From IMG/VR virus record IMGVR_UViG_3300030385_002649, positions 62,001 to 126,000 of that record: a stretch of DNA of 64,000 nt. One strand, written 5' to 3'. A program made the translations under genes and the position numbers. Each line of letters begins with the position of its first letter. The first letter of the stretch is position 1. Shown piece by piece: positions 19,318-39,783 of this stretch. The notes under the pieces are model-generated. The model was given only the letters and a program-made list of their open reading frames with translations. It was not told the origin of the DNA and made no database searches.

Positions 19318-20619
19318 ATGGACAATGATATCTTAAAGATCGCCAGCATGTTGGGCGAAGACCCAGACGACATCAAGGAGATGGCACTCACTACAGGTGC
19401 CATTCCTGCTGGCCCATTTGGAGACGCTGGCTTCGTTAACAAGAAGAAGTCAAAGGCCAACAAAAAACGGAGCCGCAAAAAGAAGAAATCCGGATCCGAT
19501 AACAAAGAAGGTTCAGTTCTATACTCCGGAATAGAGGACGATAAGCACATCGAAGAGGCTAGCAGAGTAAAGAAACAAGTCGCCGCGCCGACAAGATTGA
19601 TGACTCCAGAAGAGAGAAAAGCGAAAAAGAAACAAGAGGTTAACCTTCACCTTAAGCAAAAAGCGCAACATCTATCCCCATCCAACATCAGAAGACCAAA
19701 TTCGATCATCTTCAACGGTGGGATCGACGTTAACCCAATGGAGGTTCCTGATTCCACTGAAATGCAAGGAATCAACGCTAGGGTAGAAAAGGCCGAAAGC
19801 TCACTTGGCGAATCATGGAAAAAACTCACTAATATCTTTAACGCCCTAAGACACTTAGAAATGTACGATGGCAAGATCCAGATCTTCGATAAGAACAAGT
19901 GTCACTTTTACAGACAATATCGAATCTTGAATGACATTTATTCCAGCGGACACTCAGCATATGAAGAGGCTCAAAATGAATGGGGCGGAGGGATTTCGCC
20001 GGGTCTAAGCATGCTTCCTCCCGTTAAAGGTTGGAGGGGGATCCACAATTGGAACAAAAACGCACTCGAACGTAGTCGCTACGTCAAGAATTACGTTCGT
20101 CAAATTGCTTACGTCTATTTGAAGCACATTGGTGAAAATGTTCTGATCACTCATATGGGCAGTTGCAGTAAAGCTGACTGTCTGAAATCCAACCACGCTC
20201 ATTTCCTTATTAAAGGATACTGCGATGGTTTCAAAGAGGACGGGCAAGTCTGGAATATGACTAGAGCGGTGAAAAAGGTATTCAAGATCCGCCAGAAAGC
20301 TCTGCAAGACTTCGCAGCTAAGAGAAGGAAGAAAAAGGAAAAACCACCAGCCCCTACTCTGAGCCCAGGAGACCAAGCACGCTATGATGAAGAAATCGCC
20401 ACTCATGGTAGGGTTAGAGGTGGACAAATGGCTTACGTCTTCCAAGACTACTATTATGACCTTATCCACAAGAACGATAAGGATGAGATGCCCGAAGTTG
20501 GCCCAGAAACTGCAGCCAAGCAGGGGCAAGCTCAAGCGCCTAACCCCACACAAGTTGACGAGTGGGCACCTTTTGATATCTCAGGGTATCTAACAGAAGA
20601 CCCGGATTTGTTTATATGA
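19318..20619 (+). CDS. hypothetical, probable virion/internal protein with LxEDPD motifs at both ends
   Basis: N-terminal IASMLGEDPD and C-terminal ISGYLTEDPDLF; TAAAAATA upstream. Confidence 0.7.
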   Translation: MDNDILKIASMLGEDPDDIKEMALTTGAIPAGPFGDAGFVNKKKSKANKKRSRKKKKSGSDNKEGSVLYSGIEDDKHIEEASRVKKQVAAPTRLMTPEERKAKKKQEVNLHLKQKAQHLSPSNIRRPNSIIFNGGIDVNPMEVPDSTEMQGINARVEKAESSLGESWKKLTNIFNALRHLEMYDGKIQIFDKNKCHFYRQYRILNDIYSSGHSAYEEAQNEWGGGISPGLSMLPPVKGWRGIHNWNKNALERSRYVKNYVRQIAYVYLKHIGENVLITHMGSCSKADCLKSNHAHFLIKGYCDGFKEDGQVWNMTRAVKKVFKIRQKALQDFAAKRRKKKEKPPAPTLSPGDQARYDEEIATHGRVRGGQMAYVFQDYYYDLIHKNDKDEMPEVGPETAAKQGQAQAPNPTQVDEWAPFDISGYLTEDPDLFI

Positions 20620-21719
20620 TACCAGTATATCAGCCATGGCTAACATCTAAAGAAAAGAACAACGTCCACGAAGCAATGGAGTCAGGTTGGATCTCATCAA
20701 CCGGCAAATACGTGGAGAAAGCCGAAGAGTTATTCGCAGACTTTGTAGGAACGAAACACGCTATAACAACCACCTCCGGAACTACAGCACTTCATTTATG
20801 CTTAAGAGCAATGAAAATCGAAGACCCTAAGAAATACGTTATCGTCCCGAACATTACGTTCATTGCTACCGCCTTCGCCGCCTCTTATGAAAGGATGGGA
20901 GTATTGATTGCTGAAGTTGATCCAAGAACGTGGAATATCGATCCATTACAAGTTGAACATTTCTGCTCTAATTATGATGTCGCAGCGGTAATTCCAGTAC
21001 ATTTATATGGGAATCCGGCTGACATGATTGCGCTTAAAGTCCTACAGGAAACCTGGGGTTTTGCGCTGATTGAAGACGCTTGCGAGTCTCTTGGTGCCAA
21101 AATCGGGGATAAAATGACGGGTTCTCTGGGCGACATGTCTTGCTTCTCCTTCTACGGGAACAAGACCTTCACTAGCGGAGAAGGCGGGATGGTCACGACG
21201 GATGATGACGAGTATGCTGAAAGGGCTCGGTTGCTACGAGGACAGGCTCAGGATCCGAACAAACGCTACTGGCACGTGGACGTGGGTCACAATTATCGCA
21301 TGACTAATATCCAAGCGGCTATCTTATGCGCCCAACTTGAGAGAGCGGACCAAATACTAGCCGAGAAGAAAAGAGTCTCTGACCGCTACTTGGCTAACTT
21401 GGGCGACATGGACGAATTGAAGTTCCAGAAGGTCTTCGAGGACCATGAACACTCTAATTGGTTAGTAAGCACTGAGCTTCTAACCACTAAAAATCACATT
21501 TTCTCAACTTGGATGCGGGAGAACGGGGTAGACACTAGAAAAGTCTTCTACCCGATTTCTGACATGCCGACGTATAAGGACTGTGAAACGCGAGAGCCTC
21601 CCCGAATATCGAGGAGGCTCTCTGAGCACGGTGTGTCGTTTCCATCTTATCCAGAATTGAGCAATAAAGAGGTCGACCACATTTGTGATCTAGTAAAGAA
21701 CTTTTTACTTAAGGCTTAG
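20616..21719 (+). CDS. DegT/DnrJ/EryC1/StrS PLP aminotransferase (perosamine-synthase-like)
   Basis: SGWISSTG, SGTTALHL, PVHLYG, EDACES, SFYGNKTFTSGEGG, NYRMTNIQAA. Confidence 0.93.
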   Translation: MIPVYQPWLTSKEKNNVHEAMESGWISSTGKYVEKAEELFADFVGTKHAITTTSGTTALHLCLRAMKIEDPKKYVIVPNITFIATAFAASYERMGVLIAEVDPRTWNIDPLQVEHFCSNYDVAAVIPVHLYGNPADMIALKVLQETWGFALIEDACESLGAKIGDKMTGSLGDMSCFSFYGNKTFTSGEGGMVTTDDDEYAERARLLRGQAQDPNKRYWHVDVGHNYRMTNIQAAILCAQLERADQILAEKKRVSDRYLANLGDMDELKFQKVFEDHEHSNWLVSTELLTTKNHIFSTWMRENGVDTRKVFYPISDMPTYKDCETREPPRISRRLSEHGVSFPSYPELSNKEVDHICDLVKNFLLKA

Positions 21720-22218
21720 GATGCCATTGTCCGCTTCGTACCAGTCTAGCCCAAGTTAGAGCGTCCTCATAAGAGACAATCCCTCCAGTGAAGATCTTAT
21801 ACTTGGACAGCGCAGATGCGACATTTTCAGGTCGCAGTGAACCATCTAGTTTCATCTGGTGATAATACCCAATTTTCTCTTCCGCTAAAGCGAACTTAGC
21901 ATCCGTCATATATTGTCCGACCCAGGAGAAAACTCCTGTCTTCTCCTGGCGTTGTGCATGAATTCGTTCATGAGTCATGATAGACCTGAACTTCACAGAG
22001 CCGGGTGGCTTCAGCTTGAGGTAGTAATCGAGGTCCGTTACGTAACAATACGGGGAAACAGTGGTGATATTGGATTTGGAGGGAACGACCAATGCTGCCA
22101 TTTTAGAACGTTGTTTAATTTCCTTCAGGGGAAGCCATTCATCGTCCAGTTCGTAAGATTTAGCGTTGGTACAACCCGAGAAAACCAAGACTGCGAGAAT
22201 TAACAAATACTTTTTCAT
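21709..22218 (-). CDS. lipoprotein with HExxH motif, paralog 2
   Basis: Lipobox VFSGC; MTHERIHAQRQE; alignable along its length with 17027..17524. Confidence 0.78.
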   Translation of the reverse strand: MKKYLLILAVLVFSGCTNAKSYELDDEWLPLKEIKQRSKMAALVVPSKSNITTVSPYCYVTDLDYYLKLKPPGSVKFRSIMTHERIHAQRQEKTGVFSWVGQYMTDAKFALAEEKIGYYHQMKLDGSLRPENVASALSKYKIFTGGIVSYEDALTWARLVRSGQWHPKP

Positions 22219-22230
22219 ATAGCACCTAGA

Positions 22231-22238
22231 TATTTTTA
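22231..22238 (-). promoter_or_regulatory. TAAAAATA putative late promoter
   Basis: 12 nt upstream of ATG22218. Confidence 0.5.
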
Positions 22239-23522
22239 GTGAAACTGTTCTGTTTCGGTTGAGCCTGCAAGAGCAGACGTTGATGGGTCCACGCCAATGG
22301 TTTTCTTGATATCGTCATAATATCCGGTACCAACAAATCCTTGGTGCTTGACAGCCTTGTAACCATCCGATTCCGCAAGAGCGAATTCTTCTTCCTGAAG
22401 AGTAGAGTACGCTGCCATTCCAGAATCTTTATAGTCATGAGCTAGCTTGTACATCGACGTGTTCAATGAGTGGAAGCCAGCAAGGGTGATGAATTGAAAC
22501 ACATAACCCATTTTGGCTAGTTCATTCTGAAATTCAGACAATTCTCCGGTCCGGTCCTTGTTAGATTCCCAATTGAAGGATGGAGAACAATTATACGCCA
22601 ACATCTTGTGTGGGTATTTGTCGTGAATTGCCGTGGCAAATTGACGGGCCTCTTCGAGGTCGGGTCTAGCTGTTTCTACCCATACCATGTCAGCGTAAGG
22701 AGCGTAAGCTAGACCTCTAGCGATTGCCATGTCCAACCCGCCAGTGACGCCATAGAATTGGCCTTGGCTTTCTCCGGTTAGGAAGGGCTTATCGCGGTCG
22801 TCGATGTCTGAAGTCATGAGTTTAGCGCTGTTGGCATCAGTTCTAGCAATGATCACAGTGTTAGCACCGACCACGTCTGCTGCTAACCTAGCGACTTTTA
22901 GTTTTTCGATGAATTCGCTGGTTGGGACTAGAACTTTACCGCCGAGGTGGCCACATTTCTTTTCGGAGGACAGTTGGTCTTCCAGGTGGACCCCTGCTGC
23001 TCCAGCTTCGATCATCCCTTTTACAACTTCGAAGGTGCACTGGACTCCGCCGAATCCGGCTTCAGCGTCAGCTACGATTGGCTGGACATAATTGTAACGG
23101 GGTTTCCCGTCTGTCTCTCCGAATTCGATCTGGTCTGCTCTTATCATGGCGTTGTTCAATTTCTGAACGTGGAAGGCCATGCTGTTGTTGGCGTAGAGGC
23201 TTAGGTCTGGGTACATCTGGCCGGACAGGTTGTTATCTGCGGCGACTTGCCATCCACTTGCGTAGACCGCCCTGAGGCCAGCTTGCGTCATTTGGATAGC
23301 TTGGTTTCCTGTTACTGCTCCGAGTGCTCTAACGGCGGGGCCTTCTTTTCGGAAGGCTTTTTGGCATTCTTTGTGCAATTGATCAGACATTTCCTCAGCT
23401 AGAAACCGTGGGTCTTTTGTGCCTCTCAGTCGGACGACATCTTGCTCGCTATAATCTCGTTGAACTTCTTTCCATCTGGGATCTGACCATTCGTTTTTTA
23501 AGTCTTCTGCTGATTTGTTCAT
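22236..23522 (-). CDS. aceA: isocitrate lyase
   Basis: SGWQVAAD, YPDLS, IVADAEAGFGG, HLEDQ, KKCGH, ARTDA, YNCSPSFNW, FITLAGFH. Confidence 0.97.
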   Translation of the reverse strand: MNKSAEDLKNEWSDPRWKEVQRDYSEQDVVRLRGTKDPRFLAEEMSDQLHKECQKAFRKEGPAVRALGAVTGNQAIQMTQAGLRAVYASGWQVAADNNLSGQMYPDLSLYANNSMAFHVQKLNNAMIRADQIEFGETDGKPRYNYVQPIVADAEAGFGGVQCTFEVVKGMIEAGAAGVHLEDQLSSEKKCGHLGGKVLVPTSEFIEKLKVARLAADVVGANTVIIARTDANSAKLMTSDIDDRDKPFLTGESQGQFYGVTGGLDMAIARGLAYAPYADMVWVETARPDLEEARQFATAIHDKYPHKMLAYNCSPSFNWESNKDRTGELSEFQNELAKMGYVFQFITLAGFHSLNTSMYKLAHDYKDSGMAAYSTLQEEEFALAESDGYKAVKHQGFVGTGYYDDIKKTIGVDPSTSALAGSTETEQFH

Positions 23523-23530
23523 GGTTCTCC

Positions 23531-25033
23531 TTAAGCGGGGTTGTGTTGTTGAGAGTAAATGAGTTGTTTGGTTTCTTCGGCGGCTTGTCTTAGTGTAGCC
23601 TCTGTGCCCAGTTCGCCAGTATCATGTGCTAATGCGATGATCGAATCGAGTACTTGAGCGAAGCACTGTTCAACTTGTTTCTTGGAAACAACCTCGTGTT
23701 GTAGTCTTTGAGCGACCATCAGCCTGCAGATTCTGTCCGTCGCGAGGTCTTCCATATACCCATCGAGCAAGACGGCTCCTCTACCATTAATGACGCCATT
23801 TCGGTATCTTACAGACACTCGGATGCAGTCCTGGAGCCCTTCTATAGTCATCGGAAGTGGAGTGGCCCGATCCCACATATCTGAAACATCCAGAAGATCA
23901 GGGATCGGACAATCAGGAATAATGTCTAGCTGATTAAATGCCGGGAATGCGCCAACTGCGATGTCATTCTGATCCGGATGTCCAGTCCAAGCTCCATCGA
24001 ACCCACAAGAGGCTTCATTAGCCTTATCCTTAGCCAGAAGTGTCAAAGCTCGGTCGTTCAATTCCTTATCGGAACGGCTTGGGTAAAGAGCGGTCATCCC
24101 GCCGATAGCGAGAATCCCAAATTCGTGGCATGTTTGGACAAGGTGGTGACGGAGGTTCTGAAAGAAAGCAGCGTCGTGGGGGATGCTGTTTCGGTCTGGG
24201 AGGAGGAATTCCTTCTCGCTATTCCAATCGATCCAGCTAGCCATATAATCCCATCGGCCAAGATTTAAGCCAAGTAGATGGTCTCGCAATTGGCCGATGA
24301 ATCCTCTTAAGTCACATGCCATTGGGTAGGATTCTACAAGGGCCATACATTTGATGTAGTTATCTTCTAGACCAACGGACCTAGCGGCGTGTTTTAGCAC
24401 TTCTGACCACCAGGCAGCTTCGGCTGGGTGTTCAGTCTTTGGAATGTAAATGCATAATGGTTTGTCCATTAGGTCGGGTTTGATGCGCCAAACGAGGTTG
24501 GCGATATCGAAGAGCGGGGCTGAAGTCAATCTACCGTTCACAACTTGGGTTAGGTGTAAGCCTCTGACTCTGCTCCAGACGACTGGATTGCCCGTGATCT
24601 CGTGAGTCTCTCCTCTTTTTTCATAAGATAAGGAGCCATGTAGGGCTTGGACAATGTTATCGTACCCTGTTTGGAGGGACTCCCAATTGTTAGCCATGGA
24701 ATCCTCTAAGTCGAGCATAACGCCTGGCGACCCGGAGTTGATCATTTTAACAACTAGTTCAGCGCTATCCGCTGGTCCGGTCATTTGGTTTCTTTGGTCT
24801 CGACACCAGGTTGGAAGGCTTACTTTCCAGGTTGATTTGCGTCTTGGCGGGGAGCCCGCTTTTTCACATTCACCCCTGGCCTTGGGCTTCCAATCTGGGA
24901 ACTTTTTGGTGCGTTCTAGAATCTCTCTACGTTGTTCTATCGCTTTGAAGGCATGGGCGGAGAATTTACTGTGAAATGACTCGTAGAATTCTAGAAATTC
25001 TGGGTCTACTAAATTGCCAACGTTAGGTTTCAT
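23531..25033 (-). CDS. aceB: malate synthase
   Basis: QMTGP, MLDLEDS, RVRGLH, YIPK, LVES, GLNLGRWDY, AIGGM, GFDGAWTGHP, MEDLAT (catalytic Arg/Glu/Asp/Asp present). Confidence 0.94.
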   Translation of the reverse strand: MKPNVGNLVDPEFLEFYESFHSKFSAHAFKAIEQRREILERTKKFPDWKPKARGECEKAGSPPRRKSTWKVSLPTWCRDQRNQMTGPADSAELVVKMINSGSPGVMLDLEDSMANNWESLQTGYDNIVQALHGSLSYEKRGETHEITGNPVVWSRVRGLHLTQVVNGRLTSAPLFDIANLVWRIKPDLMDKPLCIYIPKTEHPAEAAWWSEVLKHAARSVGLEDNYIKCMALVESYPMACDLRGFIGQLRDHLLGLNLGRWDYMASWIDWNSEKEFLLPDRNSIPHDAAFFQNLRHHLVQTCHEFGILAIGGMTALYPSRSDKELNDRALTLLAKDKANEASCGFDGAWTGHPDQNDIAVGAFPAFNQLDIIPDCPIPDLLDVSDMWDRATPLPMTIEGLQDCIRVSVRYRNGVINGRGAVLLDGYMEDLATDRICRLMVAQRLQHEVVSKKQVEQCFAQVLDSIIALAHDTGELGTEATLRQAAEETKQLIYSQQHNPA

Positions 25034-25310
25034 CGTCTTCCTCTTTTTCGATAATTTTTAGAAACCCAATTTTGTGAGCTATTGCTGCCCACAGCTGATC
25101 ACATATTGGTGCATGTGCGACCTCTTGGTATTTCCCGGTTTTAATGTCTTTTCTTAGGGTTTTTAGGTCTAGAACGTTCTTAACTGAACGAGTTACTAGA
25201 ACGTTCTCTTCTTTTTCCACCCAGCCTTTGGGTGTTTCTACAGCGAAATGTCTCCCGTTTCGTTTTACAACTAGTAGGGAGATAGGTTTTGTGAACACCC
25301 ATTCTTTCAT
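25023..25310 (-). CDS. hypothetical protein (95 aa)
   Basis: Coupled upstream of aceB. Confidence 0.65.
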   Translation of the reverse strand: MKEWVFTKPISLLVVKRNGRHFAVETPKGWVEKEENVLVTRSVKNVLDLKTLRKDIKTGKYQEVAHAPICDQLWAAIAHKIGFLKIIEKEEDDET

Positions 25311-25751
25311 TTAGTAATTCTTCCATTTAGGCTGGTAGAGCTTTTTTTTCTCCTCTTCAGTCATAGAGAGTTGTTCGACGTTGAGCTTGTCGATTTCGTC
25401 CATTAGTTGGTTACGCTGAAGGTTGAGGTCGCACGCTCTTTTTAAAATATGGCGGACACGATCTGGGTCATCTCCAAATTCTTCAGCCCACTCGTCCGGG
25501 GTCATTCTGCGAAACCTGTAGAGGTCGTCTTGAGCGTGCCACATTCTTACAGTAACAATTGAAAGTTTGTCAGTTAAGGAGCCAATTGTGTCCATTTCTT
25601 CCCTCTTGCCTTCTAATTCTACCGGGTTGCACGGGCTGTCATTGAACAAATTATGTAGAGTGGAATGAAACCACTCTACAAGGTGCTCGGAGTCTAATTT
25701 TTTAACTGCTGCGCTCTCAGCGCGCTCTGCCAAAATTGAGTAGTTTAACAT
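25311..25751 (-). CDS. DUF4254-like helical protein
   Basis: DTIGSLTDKLSI...WHAQD and LNLQRNQLMDEID resemble DUF4254 motifs. Confidence 0.6.
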   Translation of the reverse strand: MLNYSILAERAESAAVKKLDSEHLVEWFHSTLHNLFNDSPCNPVELEGKREEMDTIGSLTDKLSIVTVRMWHAQDDLYRFRRMTPDEWAEEFGDDPDRVRHILKRACDLNLQRNQLMDEIDKLNVEQLSMTEEEKKKLYQPKWKNY

Positions 25752-25769
25752 TAGGACAACCAGTATCTG

Positions 25770-26438
25770 ATGGCTATGAAATCAGAATCTAAGATATTTA
25801 TTCTCGGTTCGAGTGGGTTCGCCCATGAAATTAAGGACTATTTCTTAGAGTATTACAGAGCTAAGAGACCGAAGGGGCAAATAGCGGACCTTTACGTTAA
25901 TCATGTTGGGTTGCACGAACCTGAGTTCTATTTTGTTGGTCCTGACGGCATGTCTGTGAAAGAATATCACGCGGCCCTAAATGCCAGTCTGTCCAAGCCT
26001 ACCTTCTCTATTATGGGGTCTGGCAAGTGTTCTGTTAAGATTAAAATGCTAGAAGAGATTAGGGGACATATTATTAGTATGGTGCACCCTACCTCGCATG
26101 TTATTTCCGCTAAGATCGGTTCTGGGAGCATCATTGCCCCCGGAAGCGTGGTAGCCCCTAGAGCGGTGGTCGGAGACCATTGTCTTGTAAATTACAACGC
26201 CACAATCGGCCATGATGCTATTGTTGGAGATCTATCTGTTGTGTCTCCTAACGCGTCTATCGGAGGATCTTGTGTGCTGGGTCGCGGTGTCCATATTGGT
26301 TCTAATGCTTCGGTACGAGAAGGATTAAAAATTGGTGAAGGCGCAACGGTGGGTATGGGAGCGGTAGTAATTAAAGATGTCCCCTCTGGTGTAACCGTCG
26401 TTGGCGTGCCCGCTAGAACACTTATAAAGGAGAATTAA
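25770..26438 (+). CDS. NeuD/PglD/PerB-like sugar acetyltransferase (hexapeptide repeat)
   Basis: LGSSGFA...; left-handed beta-helix repeats; IGHD; GVPAR. Confidence 0.9.
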   Translation: MAMKSESKIFILGSSGFAHEIKDYFLEYYRAKRPKGQIADLYVNHVGLHEPEFYFVGPDGMSVKEYHAALNASLSKPTFSIMGSGKCSVKIKMLEEIRGHIISMVHPTSHVISAKIGSGSIIAPGSVVAPRAVVGDHCLVNYNATIGHDAIVGDLSVVSPNASIGGSCVLGRGVHIGSNASVREGLKIGEGATVGMGAVVIKDVPSGVTVVGVPARTLIKEN

Positions 26439-26663
26439 ATGAGTGACGAGGAAACTGTTGTTGAAGTTGATAAGTTGGCCGGAACAAAGCTCGGAGAGCT
26501 ACGTGATTTGGTCGCTAGTTTAGAAGAGGATTACCTCAAGGGTTGCGCAGGCGTTAAGACAGCCGCACGACGAGTAAGAAAAGGAGTCCAAAGCTTGGAC
26601 ACTATGCGTTCTGACATTCGTACCGAGCTTTTGTCCGCTATGAAGAAAGACAAAGAAGATTAA
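26439..26663 (+). CDS. histone H1-like Hc1 family small protein
   Basis: LRDLVASLEEDYLKGCAGVKTAARRVRKGVQSL...IRTE matches the bacterial Hc1-like pattern. Confidence 0.7.
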   Translation: MSDEETVVEVDKLAGTKLGELRDLVASLEEDYLKGCAGVKTAARRVRKGVQSLDTMRSDIRTELLSAMKKDKED

Positions 26664-27273: not shown

Positions 27274-27671
27274 AGAAATTTCTAATCGCGGCTCTCGCCG
27301 CCATGTGCATCGGCACTCTCACTATAGCAGCAACGTCCCCCTCAAGGAGCGGCGCACGAAGTAGTGGTGCCGTTGATGTAGCACAAATTGCCAGCAATTG
27401 TGTTGTTACTGGCCTCATATCAGGCCCTAAAATCAAGCACAGCGCTATTGTTAACGATACGATCATATGGCAAGGAAAAATTTATGCCGTTGACGCCAAA
27501 ACCGGAAAGATCCGTGCATGGCTTAAAAGCGATAAGAAAGCTCGTACAACATCTGTCGAATTGACAAACGTTTCAGGGAAAAAAGCAACTTTTATCGTCA
27601 CGGAAAGGTTTAAAGACGACTTCGTGATCAATCATTTTTTTCATAAAGTTATTAAGCGGTCAAAACGATAA
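27270..27671 (+). CDS. secreted hypothetical protein (signal peptide)
   Basis: MKKFLIAALAAMCIG; VVTGLISGP..SAIVN weakly recalls GspC/PilP-type folds. Confidence 0.65.
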   Translation: MKKFLIAALAAMCIGTLTIAATSPSRSGARSSGAVDVAQIASNCVVTGLISGPKIKHSAIVNDTIIWQGKIYAVDAKTGKIRAWLKSDKKARTTSVELTNVSGKKATFIVTERFKDDFVINHFFHKVIKRSKR

Positions 27672-31973: not shown

Positions 31974-33122
31974 TAATTTCCTGCCGCCAGGATAACTGCT
32001 AATTCGTTTCACCAATTCTAAGCCATGCTTGATTAACGCCTTTTCATAAACCTCGGCTGTGTTTATATCCTCTAAGATTAAGAACTTCTTGGTAAGGTTA
32101 GCTAACAGCTTGGCAAATATTTCATGCTTAAATGTTATATGGTGCACAATCGCTAAAGCAATCACAAGTTCAGAAGAGTATCTCTCGATTTCACGATACT
32201 CATTTCTAATAAGCCTTTCGATGTCAGAATAAACAAACGTTGCCGGAAGACTCTTATCAAATCCGTCAGCGTCGTCAATGCAAGGTTCAACATAATCGAA
32301 ACCAACCGCTGATTCTACGCCGCCCTGCTGTTTATCAATAGCCAAGAAAGTGTAATACCCCTTATTACAAGCGACATCAGTTACAGTTTTGTACTCTAAC
32401 TCATCCAATAAATCAGAGACTATCTTAGCCTTTGGATTAACTTTCTCAGGATGTTTCACATCCATGATGTTAGAGTAGTTGTTGTACCAATGGTTTTTCT
32501 TCTGAGGAAGTTTAATCGTCTTAACCCAAGTTAACAATTCATCCCAAAACTCTTTACTTTGGCAATTTCCTTTATAGCGCTTGTGATGGTTAGCTAACCA
32601 TCCGCCGTGGCCGTTGACTGATTTTCCATTATATTTCGAGTATCCACCTTGGACATCTTTCTTAAAAACATAACTGTTGATGATATACGCCAGTTTTACA
32701 AAAGAATAAGAAGCATAATTCGAGTCAATTTCAGCAACCGCATTGTAGTCTAACCAAACAAATTCGCCTCTTGAGTAAGCTATGTTGCCTTCATGAATAT
32801 CAAATAAGACGATTCCTTTCTTCAATAACTCTACGTTCATCTCACAAAGGCCAACCACTATCTTGAGAGATTGCTTACATGTCAATTCTTGGATTTTTAT
32901 TAAGTGTTCAATTATAGGATGCTCAATGACAGTCCTTAATTCTTTACCCCATCTTAATTTGATGTCAGTTTTTGAATATGGTTGAGTGTATTTGCAGGAG
33001 CTAATAGCGTCTAAAAACTGCAGTTCTCTACTCTGTAAACCCCTGTACAGTTTCTCTTTGTGGTAAAACAGTGTCGATGAAGAATCAGGGTGTCTTTTAA
33101 TGTCTTTTTTAGTAAGGATCAT
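31953..33122 (-). CDS. NoeA-like protein: kinase-like N-domain + SAM methyltransferase
   Basis: FDIHEGNI...WLDY, then DVACNKGYY, GFD, ALAIVHH. Confidence 0.7.
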   Translation of the reverse strand: MILTKKDIKRHPDSSSTLFYHKEKLYRGLQSRELQFLDAISSCKYTQPYSKTDIKLRWGKELRTVIEHPIIEHLIKIQELTCKQSLKIVVGLCEMNVELLKKGIVLFDIHEGNIAYSRGEFVWLDYNAVAEIDSNYASYSFVKLAYIINSYVFKKDVQGGYSKYNGKSVNGHGGWLANHHKRYKGNCQSKEFWDELLTWVKTIKLPQKKNHWYNNYSNIMDVKHPEKVNPKAKIVSDLLDELEYKTVTDVACNKGYYTFLAIDKQQGGVESAVGFDYVEPCIDDADGFDKSLPATFVYSDIERLIRNEYREIERYSSELVIALAIVHHITFKHEIFAKLLANLTKKFLILEDINTAEVYEKALIKHGLELVKRISSYPGGRKLSLYRVK

Positions 33123-33792
33123 TTTTCAGCTTTTTCATCGTTTTTTTATCTTTAACTCTATATTTGGCATTGCGCTCTAAACTAGATTGCCTATTAGCAT
33201 ATATTCCGAGAAACTTAGGAATATGACCCCAAGAGATATCACCAGCAGCTAGTTTAGTCCAAAATAGGGCATCTCCATATATTTCAAGTCTCTCCTCAAA
33301 AAAGCCAAATTCATCGTGAAGGCTCTTCCTCCACATGGGGAAAGGACCTAGCCCATTTCCTGGTGAGTACCCTTCATCTGAACACTTATAATAGTCATGA
33401 GCGGCTTTGTACCCTTCTTGCCATGTTGGTTTATAAGCGGAAAGTTTGTAGTCGAAGTAAGCAATGTCGGATCCTTCGTCCATTTTTTCAACTTGTGCCT
33501 TATATCCATTTGGGTGCACATAGTCATCAGTATTAGCTTGAACAACATAAGGAGTGTCTGCTAATCTTATGCCAAGGTTCATGGCTGCCCACACCGAGAT
33601 TCTCTCGTTAATAATGACTTTAACAAATTGCGGGGTGTTTGTTATATTCTCTACTAGCTTTAGTTCTTTTCCTCCTGTACAATCGATCAATATGATTTTT
33701 ATTGGCACAGCGGATTCTAGTAGGTTTAATATCTTATTTCTGATGAATTTGTCAGAATTGTAAATAGAAACAATCGCTGTGGCTTTATACAT
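33109..33792 (-). CDS. GT2-family glycosyltransferase
   Basis: AIVSIYNSDKFI, AAMNLGI, ANTDD, PMWRKSLHDEFGFF...GDALFW. Confidence 0.87.
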   Translation of the reverse strand: MYKATAIVSIYNSDKFIRNKILNLLESAVPIKIILIDCTGGKELKLVENITNTPQFVKVIINERISVWAAMNLGIRLADTPYVVQANTDDYVHPNGYKAQVEKMDEGSDIAYFDYKLSAYKPTWQEGYKAAHDYYKCSDEGYSPGNGLGPFPMWRKSLHDEFGFFEERLEIYGDALFWTKLAAGDISWGHIPKFLGIYANRQSSLERNAKYRVKDKKTMKKLKNDPY

Positions 33793-33815
33793 AGTGGTCT
33801 ACCAATAAATATTTT

Positions 33816-34646
33816 ATGAAAAAGGCTGTCATCGCTATATTTCACGGTCTTGGGGATTGCATAAACGCAACTTCCATAATTAAGCCCCTGAAAGCTAAAC
33901 ACCCAAACTGCGAAATAACGTGGGTTAGTTCTAAGGCTTACTTGCCAATAGTTGAACACAACCCTCTAATTGCACACACTGAAGGTATCCCCGGAAACGT
34001 TTGGGCCGCTGACGAGCAATACAAAAACCTCAGGAAAAAACACGGAAAGTCGCTAATAGTTCCAGCCCCATATCTCAACTCATTAGCGCAAGACAAAACC
34101 CTATTGGGCTCATACAAAGAACGGATTAAAGTGATAACTGGTGGGAAAAACCTCAATTTCACGCCTGAACCGTTATTGTTTTTAACCCCTAAAGAAGTAA
34201 AAGACGTGGACGATTGGCTAGAGGAACGGAAAATAGAAAAATTCGTAATGCTTGAGGCTATTTTCACATCCAGTCAATCATTTTGGGGTAGAGCCCATAC
34301 CGATGAAGCATTAAGAATTTGCGCTGCCAAAGGCTATACTGTATTAATGACGCACAGAGAAGACGTCAACTTACATGAATATAATAAAATATGTCCAACA
34401 TTTTGTTTAGACGTTGGTTTTAGATATATGCCAGCTTTCTACAACAAATCGTCTGGTTTCATAGGGGTTAGTAGTGGTATAACGTGCGTTGTTCATACGC
34501 ACCAGTGCCGAAAAAATATACCACACCTTGAATTTGTAAGCGGAGAGCACTGGTGCACCCGTCATTACGTCAAGAAAAACAAAGTGATCAGCTTTGACAA
34601 AAAAGTTGAATCTGTAGGAAAGCTGATACAAGAGAGAATTAAATGA
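33816..34646 (+). CDS. GT9 (heptosyltransferase-like) glycosyltransferase, paralog 1
   Basis: HGLGDCINAT...KAKHPNCEITW; FIGVSSG. Confidence 0.8.
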   Translation: MKKAVIAIFHGLGDCINATSIIKPLKAKHPNCEITWVSSKAYLPIVEHNPLIAHTEGIPGNVWAADEQYKNLRKKHGKSLIVPAPYLNSLAQDKTLLGSYKERIKVITGGKNLNFTPEPLLFLTPKEVKDVDDWLEERKIEKFVMLEAIFTSSQSFWGRAHTDEALRICAAKGYTVLMTHREDVNLHEYNKICPTFCLDVGFRYMPAFYNKSSGFIGVSSGITCVVHTHQCRKNIPHLEFVSGEHWCTRHYVKKNKVISFDKKVESVGKLIQERIK

Positions 34647-35209
34647 GCCTAGAAATTGAACCGTTTGTGGAGACCAAGGATATCATCTTTAAAGGAGACG
34701 ACCCTCTTTATTTTAAAGATGATTTGAAGAGGAAATACTATAATTTCTATTTCAGTTATGGAAGGCACTTCAAACCAAGAAATATCTTCGAAATCGGAGT
34801 CAGAACAGGCTACACTGCGTATTTCTTGCTTCTAGGGTCCAAGGCTGAAAAGTTCAGAGGCATCGACCTAGAAACCTACAAAGTGAACTCTAGTCAATTG
34901 GCTATCGGGTTAATCCGAAAAGTATGCGAAGACAGTAGCGTTGCGATTGGCGATAGCCACAAGTTGACGGCTCTAGATGAGGCTTATGATCTTGTCCATA
35001 TTGATGGTGACCACAGTTATGACGGAAAGGTCCAAGACCTAGAACTTGCCTTTGGCAGCTTGAGTCCAGACGGAGTCATCGTTGTGGATGATTACAACCC
35101 TAATCTTGGCATTGAAGTTAAGAGAGCAACTGATGATTTCGCTAAAAAACATGACCTAAAGGTTACCGTTTTACCAACCTTTACCGGCCACGCGCTACTC
35201 CAGAGGTAA
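34643..35209 (+). CDS. class I SAM methyltransferase (Methyltransf_24-like)
   Basis: FEIGVRTGYT, HIDGDHSY, GVIVVDDY. Confidence 0.88.
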   Translation: MSLEIEPFVETKDIIFKGDDPLYFKDDLKRKYYNFYFSYGRHFKPRNIFEIGVRTGYTAYFLLLGSKAEKFRGIDLETYKVNSSQLAIGLIRKVCEDSSVAIGDSHKLTALDEAYDLVHIDGDHSYDGKVQDLELAFGSLSPDGVIVVDDYNPNLGIEVKRATDDFAKKHDLKVTVLPTFTGHALLQR

Positions 35210-35211
35210 GA

Positions 35212-36144
35212 ATGCAATCGAAAATTTATCCAATAGCTAACTTTCCAAACTGGAAGGCAGCTTGTGACGCAGCCCACAAATGGCTACGTGAAAGTGGTAA
35301 AGAAACCACTCTTCTTTTCGAACAAAACAGAAATCTAGGGGACACTCTACATTTAACGCCAATCATACGGCATTATAGGTTAGAAAACCCAGACGCCGCT
35401 ATTGTTTTCCTAGTAGGTAGACCATATTCTGGCGCTCACGAGTTTAATCCGGATATTGATAAAATCTTTTGTGTTCCAGTTCTTAAACCTAAAGACAGGG
35501 TTGCGCTCCGAAAACACATTATTAGTTTCAAGGATGTTACGAAGGTGATTGCTCCATCTATTTTCCCGTATGCTGACATTTGGAAAGAATTATCTTGGTC
35601 ATATGCTGACATTGCTAGTCAATATTTTGCAAACGCTGAAATTGAAGGCATTGAACCGAAAGGTGGTCGCAACTTGATTGTGAAAATCACGGATGCGGAC
35701 CGAAAATGGGCTAAAGGTTTCATGAAGAGGCATAACTTAAAAAGGAAAACCTCTTGTGTTTTAGAGTATAACTCTTATTCCGCTCAGCCTGTTTGGCGTG
35801 CGCCGAAGTTTACTAAATTTGTACAACATGCCAAGAAACATGGCATTAAGTGCATCAGCATTGCTGGTAAGAAAGAGAAAGCTATTCCTGGTACGATTGA
35901 CGCTACTGGTATTTCTTGGCGTCAATCGGTCGCTCTATTCAATGAAGTTGGTAGTTTTATTGGTGTTGGTTCGGGTCTTACGATGCTAGCTGCATCTGCT
36001 GATAATTCACCTAACATTCTGGAGATCGCAGTAGATGACCCAGTAAATATGAACGGTTGCGGCTATGCTACTAGCATCAAGATACTCAATCCTGATCCTG
36101 TCAACGTCGCTGATCATTTATGGTTTAAGGTACTAAATGGCTAA
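35212..36144 (+). CDS. GT9-like glycosyltransferase, paralog 2
   Basis: NLGDTLHLTPII...ENPDAAI; FIGVGSGLTMLAAS. Confidence 0.8.
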   Translation: MQSKIYPIANFPNWKAACDAAHKWLRESGKETTLLFEQNRNLGDTLHLTPIIRHYRLENPDAAIVFLVGRPYSGAHEFNPDIDKIFCVPVLKPKDRVALRKHIISFKDVTKVIAPSIFPYADIWKELSWSYADIASQYFANAEIEGIEPKGGRNLIVKITDADRKWAKGFMKRHNLKRKTSCVLEYNSYSAQPVWRAPKFTKFVQHAKKHGIKCISIAGKKEKAIPGTIDATGISWRQSVALFNEVGSFIGVGSGLTMLAASADNSPNILEIAVDDPVNMNGCGYATSIKILNPDPVNVADHLWFKVLNG

Positions 36145-36538
36145 GAATAAGAATGATAATTTTACTTTCAAAGAAAAGGAGGAAATGCCTTTTGCTAAAG
36201 TAACAAAGAAGGGTGAAGCTCGAAAAGACTTCCATCCCAAGAACACATGGGAGTTCGACATCACTGAATTTCTAGAAGATGTGATTCCAAAGGACTACTT
36301 CGCCACTACTGGAGAAGCTGTAGTAAAAATGCGCAAGCTTGAAAATGATTTGTTCGCTCAGGCTGGCCTGGCACGCAAACTTGGAAACACTTTGGAGAAA
36401 CTGAAGGGTGAGAACATTTACATGGAGACTTGCTGGACCGGAGGAAGGTTACTTCTGAAGGCGAAGAATCCACGTAAAAACCGCGAAGCTAAGCTTGAGG
36501 CATTGTGGGAGAACTTTGAAGGCGGGAAGAAACAATGA
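36137..36538 (+). CDS. hypothetical protein (133 aa)
   Basis: Coupled ORF. Confidence 0.7.
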   Translation: MAKNKNDNFTFKEKEEMPFAKVTKKGEARKDFHPKNTWEFDITEFLEDVIPKDYFATTGEAVVKMRKLENDLFAQAGLARKLGNTLEKLKGENIYMETCWTGGRLLLKAKNPRKNREAKLEALWENFEGGKKQ

Positions 36539-36762
36539 GCCCCGAAGAAGCCTCGTTTCCCATTAGATTAGCTCAAGCCGAGCATCTTTTGGCGGCTCTT
36601 GAAACACTTCCCCCGGATCAGAAGATCTCTGTTACTCACACGGATCTGGTCAAGCGTATCTCACGAGTCAGGGATACCTGGAAGAAATCTGAGGTTGCAC
36701 GCAAAGACCGTCGCGCCCCAGTTAAAACCAAGTCTCAGTTCAAGAGAAAGCCAAAGCCTTAA
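36535..36762 (+). CDS. hypothetical protein (75 aa)
   Basis: ATGA upstream and TAATG downstream overlaps. Confidence 0.65.
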   Translation: MSPEEASFPIRLAQAEHLLAALETLPPDQKISVTHTDLVKRISRVRDTWKKSEVARKDRRAPVKTKSQFKRKPKP

Positions 36763-37424
36763 TGAGCGGAAAATTTGTAGTCTTTGAAGGTGTCGACAAT
36801 AGCGGGAAGACCACCGTAGCAACACGCATAAAAGAATGGCTAGAAAGCAGAAAAGTGCAAGCGATTCTAACGAAGCATCCTGGATCCACAGCTGTTGGGC
36901 AGGAGCTTCGTCAGATTCTAAAGCACTCAGAGCACCCTATTGACCCAAATTCACAAGCATTACTTTTCGCTGCTGACAACAGTCTGTTTATTAACAACAT
37001 TCTGAAGCCCGCTAAGAAGACCGGATGCTGGATTCTGTGCGACCGAAACAACTTCATCAGTTCCCTCGCCTACCAGATCGCCTCAGGGTGTGATTTCGAC
37101 CACCTAGACAACGTCCACGCGGCCACGGGAAATACCGAAGATACAAAAATCGACGTGCTCTTCGTCTTTTACTGCTCGTGGGAAAACACGAAGCTCCGTA
37201 AGTCTCTAGCGGGTGATGAAGTGCCCGACCGATACGAAGATCAGGGCAGGGATTACTTTAACAAACTTCACGATTGTTATGATAAATTGCTGTCCGAGCA
37301 ATCCGGGCGTCTTCAGAAGTTTGTCAAGGACTTAGACAACGTCCATTACATCGACGCTAATCGAACTCTAGATGAAGTAATCGGCGAGATTAAAGGGATC
37401 CTAGAAGTTAATCTTCGAGGATGA
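36762..37424 (+). CDS. tmk: thymidylate kinase
   Basis: FVVFEGVDNSGKTT, ALLFAAD, CDRN..SSLAYQ, RYE, IDAN. Confidence 0.92.
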   Translation: MSGKFVVFEGVDNSGKTTVATRIKEWLESRKVQAILTKHPGSTAVGQELRQILKHSEHPIDPNSQALLFAADNSLFINNILKPAKKTGCWILCDRNNFISSLAYQIASGCDFDHLDNVHAATGNTEDTKIDVLFVFYCSWENTKLRKSLAGDEVPDRYEDQGRDYFNKLHDCYDKLLSEQSGRLQKFVKDLDNVHYIDANRTLDEVIGEIKGILEVNLRG

Positions 37425-37727
37425 GATCATTAGAGTCGCAATGATTAACACTACCGTAACGTATCCCCAATCGATGTTCCATCTTGCTGACTTTGGCTCT
37501 ACGGGCTGAGGCACAAATGATGGCTCTTCGTCACGGAACTCTAGCTTACCTTTTAACTTCCTCAGGCGGTCTATTTTGTCGTCTGTGGGACCAGCTGCTA
37601 CCACTTCAATTGGGTATAGCCGCATCTTGTAAATCTTGGCTAAAAAGCCTTCGTAGTTTGGAGCCTCGATGACGCCTTCATGGACTTTGTCCTTAGCGTC
37701 GACGGCTTTGTACTTGAACTTTCTCAT
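37401..37727 (-). CDS. PilC/GspF N-terminal-like domain + single C-terminal TM helix
   Basis: MRKFKYKAVDAKDKVHEGVIEAP...KMRLYPIEV; TM WGYVTVVLIIATLMI; no GspF core domains. Confidence 0.65.
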   Translation of the reverse strand: MRKFKYKAVDAKDKVHEGVIEAPNYEGFLAKIYKMRLYPIEVVAAGPTDDKIDRLRKLKGKLEFRDEEPSFVPQPVEPKSARWNIDWGYVTVVLIIATLMISSSKINF

Positions 37728-37756
37728 CACTATATTGTACGCTTAAGGAAACATCG

Positions 37757-38200
37757 ATGAACGAAATTGACACAGTATCCCTCGAATATATGCTAATTCA
37801 TGAAGACGCTATTCTTCCAAGTAAGAAACGCCAAGAAGATGCTGGATATGACATCTACACAATTGAAACTAAGATCATTCCGGCTAGGAGTATCTTATCA
37901 TTTAGCACTGGTATTAGAGCGGCGTGCCCTTTAGGCTGGTTTATGAGCATTCGTGGCAGATCCAGTCTTGGGTTTAAAGGGATCAAACCATTTATCGGTA
38001 CATTAGACGCAGGCTACAATGGAGAACTAAAAGTCTTGCTAGAAAATTTTGGAGATGAGCCTTACCAAGTAAATAAGGGTGACAGAATTGCTCAACTAAT
38101 CTTAGAGCGTCAAACAGAAGTAAAGTTTGTTGAAATAGAAGAGTTCTCTCCAGAGTACAACAAGCGCGGAACTGATGGATTCGGAAGCAGTGGAAAATAA
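37757..38200 (+). CDS. dut: trimeric dUTPase
   Basis: AGYD, GRSSLG, GTLDAGYNGE, GDRIAQL, RGTDGFGSSG. Confidence 0.95.
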   Translation: MNEIDTVSLEYMLIHEDAILPSKKRQEDAGYDIYTIETKIIPARSILSFSTGIRAACPLGWFMSIRGRSSLGFKGIKPFIGTLDAGYNGELKVLLENFGDEPYQVNKGDRIAQLILERQTEVKFVEIEEFSPEYNKRGTDGFGSSGK

Positions 38201-38535
38201 TGCTAATAATCGTATACGCTAGAATAATCGACAACAAGAAGAACGGTCTAGAGATGGAAGGGCCATTCCTTGGTCCGGAGTCTTCGACTATGGAAGAAGC
38301 ACATGCTCATTGCTCAGATCTAGTGACTGAAAGCAAGAATCATACTATTGTTCGTATTTATAACTTGGATGAGTTTAGCGAAAAGGGCGCTTTGGAAAAG
38401 GCCACCGAAAGCTTTGATAAGATCTATTCGGATATGCAACGAGCTTCTCGTATTATTGAGAAGCCCATTATTAAACGAAAAAGAAAAAAGAAGATTGTCG
38501 CTAGTACGCCTAGCGTTGTTCCCCAAAAAAGTTAA
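38200..38535 (+). CDS. hypothetical protein (111 aa)
   Basis: TAATG overlap with dut. Confidence 0.65.
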   Translation: MLIIVYARIIDNKKNGLEMEGPFLGPESSTMEEAHAHCSDLVTESKNHTIVRIYNLDEFSEKGALEKATESFDKIYSDMQRASRIIEKPIIKRKRKKKIVASTPSVVPQKS

Positions 38536-39277
38536 TATCTTCCGAAATTAACCTTGCGATGCTGGTTATGTTCCTGGAAATACTCTCGAATTCGATCTCT
38601 TCCTCTTGGGGCATGAGATCTTCTTCTGGTTGAGCAGGACCGGGTTCCCCACCTGGTGGTGGTTCTAGGTCGTCTAGACCTTCTCCGTCATCTGGTGCTG
38701 GCTCTTCTGGGAGTCCTAGATTTTCATCATCCACACCAAGTTCTCCCATGTCTGGGAGTGCGTCTTCTTCTTCCTCTGGTGGTTCTTCGACTTTGTCGAT
38801 TTTAACCACTGTGATCATTGGAAGAATGTCTTTACGCTTAATTTTAGAGTTAGGCCCGACGTCAATCTTTTGGTGACTAACTTCGAGACCTAACTCTCCA
38901 CGCACAGCATTGCCGAATTCTTTGTTCATGGCTTGGTAAAGGTTAACCTTTAGCTCATGCTCAAATTTATGCCTTATCTCTTGGTCTTCTAATTGCTTAG
39001 ATAGACGTTGTGCGAGGTCGCGCTGCTGTTGGATGTCGGGACAATGTAAGGATACGTTTTTGATGATGAAACCTGGTGGAATGAGCTTAACGGTCAGTCT
39101 CTTGATATCAAGCTCGCATCCATTGTCCTCGGCCACCTTTTTTAGAAGCCCGACCACATTATAGTAGTCGGACAATTCTAAACAGGATTCCCTTTTCCAG
39201 GCATCTGAGTACGCAGACATAACATTAGGATCCTCTGTTAAGAGTACAGCGATTTCCCTAATTTTATTATCTGCCAC
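38510..39277 (-). CDS. probable virion/head protein, acidic Pro-rich C-half, LTEDP motifs
   Basis: IAVLLTEDPNV at the N-terminus and IARLISEDINF at the C-terminus. Confidence 0.7.
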   Translation of the reverse strand: MADNKIREIAVLLTEDPNVMSAYSDAWKRESCLELSDYYNVVGLLKKVAEDNGCELDIKRLTVKLIPPGFIIKNVSLHCPDIQQQRDLAQRLSKQLEDQEIRHKFEHELKVNLYQAMNKEFGNAVRGELGLEVSHQKIDVGPNSKIKRKDILPMITVVKIDKVEEPPEEEEDALPDMGELGVDDENLGLPEEPAPDDGEGLDDLEPPPGGEPGPAQPEEDLMPQEEEIEFESISRNITSIARLISEDINFFGEQR

Positions 39278-39288
39278 AGATGGTTCCC

Positions 39289-39783
39289 TTATCTGCGCCT
39301 GCGAGGACGAGGACGACGACCGCTAAAGACATCTGGGTCTTCAGTCAGTAAGTTAGCGATGCGATTGACGCTTTCGCCATAACATTCGCCAGCAACTTCT
39401 TCGCCACCGCCGAAGTCATCAAGACCTTCCTCAGTGTCATCGAGGTCGAGTGCTGCGTCTCCGTCAGCTTCTAGACCACCCATTTCGTCTCCGCCGAGAT
39501 CAAGGCCACCTTCGTCGCCTCCACCAGCTAGAGCGCCCCAGGCACTATCTACTGCACTCATGACTGCGTCTTCGAACTCTTGGCGAGTACACGTTACGCT
39601 TTCTTCTTCTTCGGCTCCGAGGTCGTCGCCCATGTCACCCATCTCTTCGTCTCCGCCGAGATCGAGGCCGCCTTCGTCGCCTCCGAGGTCCATGTCGTCG
39701 TCGCCTTCGTCGCCCATGTCTAGATCGAAATCATCGTCCATTTCATTCATAGGTCCCATTCCGATACCGCCCATTCCAGTCAT
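39289..39783 (-). CDS. very acidic Gly/Asp/Met-rich protein (scaffold-like) with DLGGDE repeats
   Basis: GGDEGGLDLGGDE twice; C-terminal IANLLTEDPDVF + poly-Arg. Confidence 0.7.
   Translation of the reverse strand: MTGMGGIGMGPMNEMDDDFDLDMGDEGDDDMDLGGDEGGLDLGGDEEMGDMGDDLGAEEEESVTCTRQEFEDAVMSAVDSAWGALAGGGDEGGLDLGGDEMGGLEADGDAALDLDDTEEGLDDFGGGEEVAGECYGESVNRIANLLTEDPDVFSGRRPRPRRRR

What the first reader, a model, noticed from the sequence alone, without database searches (positions are those of the whole stretch)
19318..39783. Shared IAxLLTEDP[DN] motif at the termini of three unrelated proteins
Seen five times: IASMLGEDPD and ISGYLTEDPDLF (both ends of 19318..20619), IAVLLTEDPNV and IARLISEDINF (both ends of 38510..39277), and IANLLTEDPDVF (C-terminus of 39289..39783). 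Established: the T4 prohead protease cleaves after Glu in [ILV]-x-E. Inference: a short docking or cleavage tag that recruits different proteins to the prohead core. Copies at both ends suggest cross-linking or bracketed processing.
Basis: partly seen in the sequence, partly recalled or inferred. Interest (0 to 1): 0.65.

Follow-up and report, generated by a model that had tools for sequence, protein, structure and literature searches.

The report
Scaffold-mimicking capsid-loading tag, jumbo phage
Unrelated proteins of an uncultivated 371-kb T4-like phage share a 12-18 residue end tag that copies the tail of the phage's own head-scaffolding protein, so it is most likely an address label that loads them into the forming capsid, a new version of the T4 capsid targeting sequence.

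Summary
The genome (370,804 bp, terminal repeats, T4-type capsid protein and prohead protease) holds exactly six copies in four proteins: the five reported and one outside the window. All lie within about 20 residues of a protein end.

The same tag sits at the extreme N-terminus of about 20 mutually unrelated proteins in a 395-kb relative, and of many more across a large uncultivated clade whose capsid proteins are 75-90% identical.

The new result is that the tag resembles the conserved C-terminal peptide of the clade's scaffolding protein. A profile built only from scaffold tails retrieves the tags as its best genomic hits (p about 1e-24).

Most tags are followed by a hydrophobic-x-Glu site of the kind the T4 protease cuts.

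Best reading: a capsid-targeting, cargo-loading tag that mimics the scaffold tail. It is analogous to the T4 CTS but has a different sequence and works from either end. No proteomic or binding evidence exists, and one complex prediction gave no answer. I rate it a new variant of a known kind, confidence about 0.6.

The parts
19318..20619 (+). Gene of the 433-aa tagged protein (P0001): N tag, Lys-rich disordered stretch, Cys/His-rich middle, disordered linker, C tag
   Evidence: No Pfam or PHROG family. No homologue in the word search.
19339..19374 (+). N-terminal tag copy of P0001 (residues 8-19), followed by an Ile-Lys-Glu site
20578..20616 (+). C-terminal tag copy of P0001 (residues 421-433, ends the protein)
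19297..19303 (+). AAAAATA motif 14 nt before the start codon, resembling a T4 late promoter
   Evidence: inference
38510..39277 (-). Gene of the 255-aa tagged protein (P0002): N tag, small alpha/beta domain, acidic Pro-rich disordered linker, C tag
39218..39253 (-). N-terminal tag copy of P0002 (residues 9-20)
   Evidence: conserved in P0012 and P0013
38525..38560 (-). C-terminal tag copy of P0002 (residues 240-251)
   Evidence: conserved in P0012
39289..39783 (-). Gene of the 164-aa tagged protein (P0003): Asp/Glu/Gly-rich low-complexity body, C tag, Arg-rich tail. It lies 11 nt upstream of P0002 on the same strand.
   Evidence: Composition like the C-terminal half of the 1106-aa head-module protein.
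39325..39360 (-). C-terminal tag copy of P0003 (residues 142-153), the best match to the clade consensus in this genome
39806..39813 (-). CAAAAATA motif 22 nt before the P0003 start codon, resembling a T4 late promoter
   Evidence: inference

Best explanation
The motif is a portable capsid-loading tag. It consists of a short amphipathic helix (Ile-Ala-x-Leu-Leu/Ile-Thr), an acidic turn (Glu/Asp-Asp-Pro-Asp) and one or two hydrophobic residues. This copies the peptide at the very end of the phage's scaffolding protein. I infer that the scaffold tail docks on a receptor inside the assembling prohead: the basic N-terminal propeptide of the major capsid protein, or another core protein. On that view, any protein carrying the same peptide on a flexible linker is co-assembled into the prohead. 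The T4-type prohead protease would then free the cargo by cutting at the hydrophobic-x-Glu site after an N-terminal tag, at the Leu/Ile-Thr-Glu inside the tag, or by removing the capsid propeptide. The cargo would stay in the head and be injected with the DNA. Shown here: the motif, its terminal position, its spread over unrelated proteins across a clade, and its likeness to the scaffold tail. Inferred: docking, the receptor, cleavage and injection.
For: (1) The genome has a T4-type head module in T4 gene order. It holds a gp23-like capsid protein (E 8.5e-80), an S77 prohead protease (E 3.8e-20; PHROG head maturation protease) and, between them, a 251-aa protein. That protein is modelled as two long helices, a roughly 70-residue disordered linker and a short terminal helix. 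(2) In 76 relatives the protein in that position ends with the same kind of peptide. In a 30-sequence alignment at 26-52% identity only four columns are invariant, and two of them are the Ile-Ala of this terminal motif. (3) A profile made only from 59 scaffold tails ranks tags at the top of all ORFs. In the 395-kb relative, 11 of the 21 best hits after the scaffold itself are tagged ORFs (p 1.2e-24). In this genome P0001 ranks first and P0003 fourth (p 9e-7). (4) The tag begins at residue 5-9 in 15 of 20 tagged proteins of the relative. All five hits of a DNA pattern scan of IMG/VR are N-terminal. Predicted propeptides of about 19-22 residues compare with the 10-19-residue T4 propeptides (PMC9026906). 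(5) Tagged proteins share nothing else, as with the T4 internal proteins, which have only a conserved CTS (PMC3012670). (6) 19 of 27 tags are followed by hydrophobic-x-Glu (p 1.5e-16), the T4 gp21 motif L/I-x-E (PMC9026906). The capsid protein has an invariant Leu/Ile-Leu-Glu-Asp about 33 residues before the conserved GVQPM block, close to where T4 gp23 is cut. (7) Some tagged genes lie inside head modules, between protease and scaffold or just after the capsid gene. (8) T4 offers a parallel: the CTS of IPII and IPIII resembles the first nine residues of its scaffold gp22. T4 Alt is trimmed at both ends, at ITE and LTE (PMC5694885).
Against: There is no virion or prohead proteome for any member of the clade; the nearest GenBank record is an uncultured phage with 40% capsid identity. 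The one complex prediction, capsid protein plus a 36-residue tag piece, gave no answer. The scaffold assignment rests on gene order and shape only: no Pfam or PHROG family matched and there was no profile match to T4 gp22. The ungapped match of this genome's own scaffold tail to the tag is poor and needs a one-residue gap. Several clade members have no tags by the patterns used, so the system is not universal. Tagged genes are not visibly enriched near head genes. One tagged protein is an AAA+ ATPase, an unusual capsid cargo. A downstream cut cannot remove a C-terminal tag.
Confidence: 0.6

Rival explanations
1. The tag is a short linear motif for a hub that has nothing to do with the head, for example a host or phage protein of replication, transcription, division or proteolysis. 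The likeness to the scaffold tail would be coincidental, or would reflect the scaffold using the same hub, such as a membrane anchor.
For: Terminal peptides on disordered linkers are typical hub-binding motifs. Tagged genes are scattered over the genome; the fourth lies among replication and transcription genes and P0001 among sugar-modification genes. Cargo includes a NUDIX hydrolase and an AAA+ ATPase. Some scaffold tails end with an Asp-Pro-Ala-Phe-Ile-Arg-like peptide. By my own recollection this recalls the conserved FtsZ C-terminal peptide; I did not test it.
Against: The statistical link to the scaffold tail is very strong. The motif is absent from every other protein of the genome, including the replication proteins that carry clamp-binding tails in T4. 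The invariant part of the scaffold motif is Ile-Ala, not the FtsZ-like part. T4 genes for internal proteins and Alt are scattered too.
Confidence: 0.15
2. The tag is only a recognition and cleavage site (or degron) for the prohead protease. It would mark proteins for timed processing or destruction, not for packaging.
For: Leu/Ile-Thr-Glu inside the tag equals proven T4 gp21 sites: gp23 and Alt ITE-6 and LTE-619 (PMC5694885). A second hydrophobic-x-Glu follows most tags. The capsid protein has a similar invariant site.
Against: T4-type proteases need only about three residues (PMC9026906), whereas 12-18 are conserved here, including an amphipathic helix. The internal Glu is Asp in 9 of 27 tags. 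The scaffold motif sits at the last residues of the protein, where cutting would remove only one to three residues. The protease is active inside the prohead, so substrates must get there first.
Confidence: 0.12
3. The shared peptide is a relic of common descent or of recombination between gene starts, a shared leader exon or cassette junction without a function of its own.
For: In the 395-kb relative many tagged genes also share a promoter-like motif placed exactly 4 nt before the start codon. Promoter plus tag could therefore travel as a unit. One relative has tandem arrays of tagged paralogues.
Against: Synonymous codons differ freely between copies while the residues are kept. The tag is kept between orthologues at 35% identity. 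It also occurs at C-termini, and in the scaffold tail, where no promoter junction exists.
Confidence: 0.05

Closest known systems
Capsid targeting sequence (CTS) of phage T4 internal proteins IPI-III and Alt (Mullaney and Black 1996, as reviewed in PMC9026906, PMC3012670, PMC5694885)
   Same: It is a short terminal peptide shared by otherwise unrelated, fast-evolving proteins of a phage with a gp21-type protease. It is followed by an L/I-x-E type site, and the propeptide length is similar. T4 Alt is processed at both ends, and the T4 CTS also resembles a scaffold terminus (gp22 N-terminus).
   Different: There is no sequence similarity to the T4 CTS. The model peptide here is the scaffold C-terminus, not the N-terminus. 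The tag is longer and works at N- or C-termini, or both. Up to about 20 carriers occur per genome, including enzymes. Nothing has been tested experimentally.
Scaffold C-terminal coat-binding peptides: phage P22 scaffolding protein helix-turn-helix, and the herpesvirus assembly protein C-terminal tail with its maturational cleavage site (own knowledge, not checked in papers here)
   Same: The layout is a helical rod, a flexible linker and a short terminal peptide that would hold the scaffold to the shell, released by a related protease (for the shape). Engineered P22 particles load cargo through fusions to that scaffold region. The tags here look like a natural version of this.
   Different: The receptor is unknown here. 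The peptide is much shorter than the P22 domain. There is no sequence relation.
Encapsulin cargo-loading peptides (own knowledge)
   Same: Short terminal peptides on disordered linkers direct diverse enzymes into a shell of HK97-fold protein, and they can be found by sequence alone.
   Different: Encapsulins have no scaffold, protease or DNA. The peptides are unrelated in sequence. Cargo here would be ejected into a host cell.
N-terminal propeptides of head and ejection proteins in giant phages phiKZ, 201phi2-1 and SPN3US (PMC5694885, PMC10052503)
   Same: Many internal head proteins of giant phages are targeted and trimmed by a gp21-like protease after Glu.
   Different: Those propeptides are mostly longer than 100 residues and are not one shared motif. 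The cleavage motif is S/A/G-x-E, and no scaffold counterpart is confirmed there.

Membership tests
T4-type capsid targeting sequence (functional class) | The phage has a gp21-type (S77) prohead protease and a gp23-type capsid protein | tested here: met
   PF03420 E 3.8e-20; PF07068 E 8.5e-80; PHROG head maturation protease and major head protein
T4-type capsid targeting sequence (functional class) | A short terminal peptide shared by otherwise unrelated proteins | tested here: met
   Six copies in four proteins here and about 20 in the relative. Only one related pair among 24 proteins with the tag masked.
T4-type capsid targeting sequence (functional class) | The peptide ends in, or is followed by, an L/I-x-E cleavage site | tested here: inconclusive
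   Hydrophobic-x-Glu follows 19 of 27 tags. Leu/Ile-Thr-Glu lies inside 18 of 27 and is Asp in 9. The C-terminal copies and the N tag of P0002 lack the downstream site. No cleavage data.
T4-type capsid targeting sequence (functional class) | Sequence similarity to the T4 CTS itself | tested here: not met
   The T4 IPII/IPIII CTS read from the T4 record shares only Ile-Ala with the tag. The tag pattern has no match in the T4 genome.
T4-type capsid targeting sequence (functional class) | The peptide is necessary and sufficient for encapsidation, and carriers are found in heads | not testable with these tools
   No cultured relative. The complex prediction gave no answer.
T4 gp22 scaffold family (for the 251-aa protein whose tail the tag resembles) | Gene lies between the protease and capsid genes; elongated helical protein | tested here: met
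   Gene order in five genomes and 76 loci. The AlphaFold model has helices at 15-104 and 114-172, pLDDT above 90.
T4 gp22 scaffold family (for the 251-aa protein whose tail the tag resembles) | Detectable sequence or profile homology to gp22 | tested here: not met
   No Pfam or PHROG family. hhalign against T4 gp22 gave probability 0.9%.

The most novel reading that the evidence does not exclude
A clade of uncultivated 270-410-kb T4-like phages has a general cargo-loading code. Any protein that carries a copy of the scaffold's terminal peptide, at either end, would be packed into the capsid and delivered to the host. On this reading the whole set of injected proteins could be read from sequence alone: about 20 in one genome, including a NUDIX hydrolase and an AAA+ ATPase. 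The T4 CTS would then be one case of a wider rule that targeting peptides imitate a scaffold terminus.
Probability: 0.45. Interest if true: 0.75.

Novelty: new variant of a known kind. Interest (0 to 1): 0.6.

Why it matters
If correct, this gives a sequence rule for finding the packaged, host-injected proteins of huge uncultivated phages, which otherwise need virion proteomics. These proteins are the first phage products to meet host defences. The result also suggests a simple origin for capsid targeting peptides, as copies of the scaffold's own docking peptide. It offers a short natural tag, usable at either end, for loading foreign proteins into large T4-like capsids. Finally, it corrects at least one public gene start that cuts the tag off.

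Tried and rejected
- **Complex prediction.** Capsid protein (alignment A1) with residues 1-36 of the fourth tagged protein gave no answer, score 0.01. This is not evidence either way.
- **Family scans.** Pfam and PHROG scans of P0001-P0003, the fourth protein, the 938-aa and 1034-aa neighbours and ten tagged proteins of relatives found nothing useful. The exceptions are one NUDIX and one AAA+ domain.
- **Homologue searches.** Single-protein scans of IMG/VR with P0001 and P0002 found nothing. The word search found no homologue of P0001.
- **Fold of P0002.** Mean pLDDT was 56, and Foldseek found no match in PDB or BFVD.
- **ESM Atlas.** No leads for P0001 or for the 483-aa tagged protein.
- **Co-variation test.** Genomes whose scaffold ends with the Asp-Gly-Asp-Pro-Ala-Phe variant have no further copies of that variant. 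There is therefore no evidence that tags track the scaffold tail.
- **Enrichment near head genes.** Tag density in 545 kb of head-module flanks is about the same as genome-wide, so I make no such claim.
- **Weak tag-like pieces.** One lies in the 1106-aa head-module protein and one near the C-end of a 1034-aa protein. They are too weak to count.
- **Split portal gene.** This was a locus-edge artefact; the portal is one ORF.
- **Clamp-binding tail idea.** Rejected because no other protein of the genome carries the motif.
- **Not run.** The large profile search was skipped because an 18-column profile cannot reach significance in 1.8 billion proteins. The read-mapping tools were not used.
Full report
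**What the window is.** The 64-kb window is bases 62001-126000 of a single 370,804-bp IMG/VR virus record with direct terminal repeats and 45% G+C. It is a jumbo myovirus of T4 type.
- It has a gp23-like major capsid protein (PF07068, E 8.5e-80), an S77 prohead protease (PF03420, E 3.8e-20), a portal, a P2-I-like baseplate protein and collagen-like fibres.
- No cultured relative exists. The best GenBank match of the capsid protein is an uncultured 595-kb phage at 40% identity, and T4-like cyanophages follow at about 30%.
- IMG/VR holds at least 177 relatives. The 80 best have capsid proteins 75-90% identical to this one.

**The observation.** All five copies are present as described.
- A profile of the copies, searched against every stop-to-stop ORF of the genome, separates them cleanly: 16.7-26.2 bits against 5.3 bits for the next ORF.
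- The search adds a sixth copy at the N-terminus of a small Lys/Glu-rich protein outside the window (genome 210358-210687, minus strand).
- A core regular expression matches five times in a crude gene set and never in 200 shuffles.
- Every copy lies within about 20 residues of a protein end.
- Synonymous codons differ between copies, so selection acts on the peptide.
- The 255-aa protein has a 70%-identical orthologue with both tags and an ATG start, and a 35%-identical one with the N-terminal tag. The database gene call for this protein starts at Met20 and loses the tag.

**The tag across the clade.** A degenerate DNA pattern for the core found five places in IMG/VR. All five are at the start of an ORF, and four lie in records that encode a protease 52-59% identical to this one.
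- I fetched a 395-kb complete relative whole. It has about 20 tagged ORFs. In 15 of 20 the Ile of the motif is residue 5-9.
- One tagged protein there carries a NUDIX domain and one an AAA+ ATPase domain. The others are small, charged and largely without known domains.
- With the tag masked, 24 tagged proteins from the two genomes show only one related pair.
- Counts of a loose pattern vary widely: 16, 12, 5, 3 and 2 in five records and 0-1 in the rest, with one hit in all reversed-pattern controls. There is none in T4.
- C-terminal and double-ended carriers occur in other members too, including a 263-aa protein encoded between the protease and scaffold genes.

**The link to the scaffold.** In T4 the order is protease (21), scaffold (22), capsid protein (23). 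Here the gene in the scaffold position encodes a 251-aa protein. Its model has two long confident helices, a roughly 70-residue disordered basic linker and a short terminal helix.
- I read the tails of the corresponding proteins in 76 relatives. They all end in an Ile-Ala-x-x-hydrophobic-acidic-acidic peptide. Some continue with Asp-Pro-Ala-Phe, which is the layout of the tag.
- In a 30-sequence alignment at 26-52% identity only four columns are invariant. Two are this Ile-Ala.
- As an independent test I built a profile from 59 distinct scaffold tails only and searched all ORFs.
  - In the 395-kb relative, 11 of the 21 best hits after the scaffold itself are ORFs already called as tagged (hypergeometric p 1.2e-24).
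  - In this genome the top hit is the N tag of P0001, the second is the scaffold and the fourth is P0003 (p 9e-7).
- Individual scores are low because the motif is short; the enrichment is what counts. This genome's own scaffold tail needs a one-residue gap to align.

**Cleavage.** The T4 protease cuts after Glu in L/I-x-E (PMC9026906). Leu-Thr-Glu and Ile-Thr-Glu are proven sites in gp23 and Alt (PMC5694885).
However, 9 of 27 tags have Asp instead of that Glu, and in T4 Asp at that place blocks processing while allowing targeting (PMC9026906).
- A hydrophobic-x-Glu that ends 13 residues after the Ile is present in 19 of 27 tags (p 1.5e-16). It would give propeptides of about 19-22 residues, close to the 10-19-residue T4 range.
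- The capsid proteins have an invariant Leu/Ile-Leu-Glu-Asp about 33 residues before the GVQPM block, close to the place where T4 gp23 is cut. The propeptide upstream of it is basic.
- For C-terminal tags a downstream cut cannot detach the tag. Release would need a cut inside or before the tag, or removal of the receptor.

**Regulation.** An AAAAATA-type motif lies 14-22 nt before the start codons of P0001, of P0003 (which is followed after 11 nt by P0002) and of the fourth gene. It also lies before the scaffold gene and the 1106-aa head-module gene. It resembles the T4 late promoter TATAAATA; this is inference only. In the 395-kb relative a CAAA-N-N-TA motif stands exactly 4 nt before the start codon of 39 ORFs. 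Across spacings of 4-6 nt there are 43 such genes, and 14 of them are tagged.

**Interpretation.** The evidence fits a capsid-loading tag that imitates the scaffold's docking peptide.
- This works like the T4 CTS, for which the literature states that internal proteins are diverse and share only the CTS (PMC3012670). T4 itself shows a parallel that I read directly from its sequence: the CTS of IPII and IPIII resembles the first nine residues of scaffold gp22.
- The tag is not a sequence relative of the T4 CTS.
- The receptor is unknown. By analogy with other phages and herpesviruses, the scaffold tail may bind the capsid protein, and the basic capsid propeptide is a candidate. T4 work speaks instead of affinity for the core.
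- Rivals are a hub unrelated to the head, a pure protease site, and a functionless recombination relic. Each is weighed in its own section of this report.

**Limits.** All functional steps are inferred. The scaffold assignment is by position and shape, not by homology. Gene starts in relatives were chosen by rule. My gene sets are crude ORF calls. Tags that diverge from the patterns used would be missed, so zero counts in some relatives are weak evidence.

Noticed in passing
window 22236-25033 (- strand): Adjacent genes for isocitrate lyase (PF00463, E 5.9e-104) and malate synthase (E 5.1e-47). This is a complete glyoxylate shunt carried by a phage.
   Followed up: no
window 18012-19298 and 20616-21719 (+ strand): A weak glycosyltransferase match (below the Pfam cut-off) and a DegT/DnrJ/EryC1 aminotransferase (E 3.8e-102) flank the tagged gene P0001. 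The downstream gene overlaps it by 4 nt, suggesting a sugar-modification operon that includes a tagged protein.
   Followed up: no
G005 whole record (loci L034-L053), e.g. L038:11673, L039:8402, L048:2594: In the 395-kb relative, 39 of 102 CAAA-N-N-TA motifs lie exactly 4 nt before the start codon of an ORF with no room for a ribosome-binding site. This suggests a class of leaderless or nearly leaderless transcripts from T4-late-like promoters. A third of these genes are tagged.
   Followed up: partly
genome 160428-163748 (- strand; locus L006:15428-18748), outside the window: A 1106-aa protein is encoded between the portal and protease genes, the place of the T4 core proteins gp67 and gp68. 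Its N-terminal 430 residues are conserved and its C-terminal half is a variable Asp/Glu/Gly-rich stretch whose composition resembles P0003. It holds a weak tag-like piece near residue 973.
   Followed up: partly
window 38510-39277 (- strand): The public protein record for this gene starts at the internal Met20 (236 aa) and omits the N-terminal tag. Orthologues show the longer form is real.
   Followed up: yes
proteins P0037 and P0048 (homologues of the scaffold): Two scaffold homologues come from NCBI metagenome bins labelled Nitrososphaerales and Ranarchaeia archaea, one on a 170-kb contig. This is either mis-binning of phage contigs or a hint about hosts.
   Followed up: no
loci L093, L094, L099 (scaffold C-termini): Some scaffold tails end with Leu-Asp-Gly-Asp-Pro-Ala-Phe-Ile-Arg or -Gly. 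By my recollection this recalls the conserved C-terminal peptide of bacterial FtsZ. I did not test it, and it could be coincidence.
   Followed up: no
T4 record, loci L054:1118-1927 and L055:3417-4416: The first nine residues of T4 scaffold gp22 resemble the ten-residue CTS of IPII and IPIII, sharing Gln, Ile-Ala-Glu and a Phe/Leu. I did not find this stated in the papers read.
   Followed up: partly
genome 155319-157160 (- strand; L006:10319-12160), just downstream of the capsid gene: A 613-aa ORF with HNH endonuclease and DNA-binding domain matches sits next to the capsid gene. It may be a mobile element insertion in the head module.
   Followed up: no
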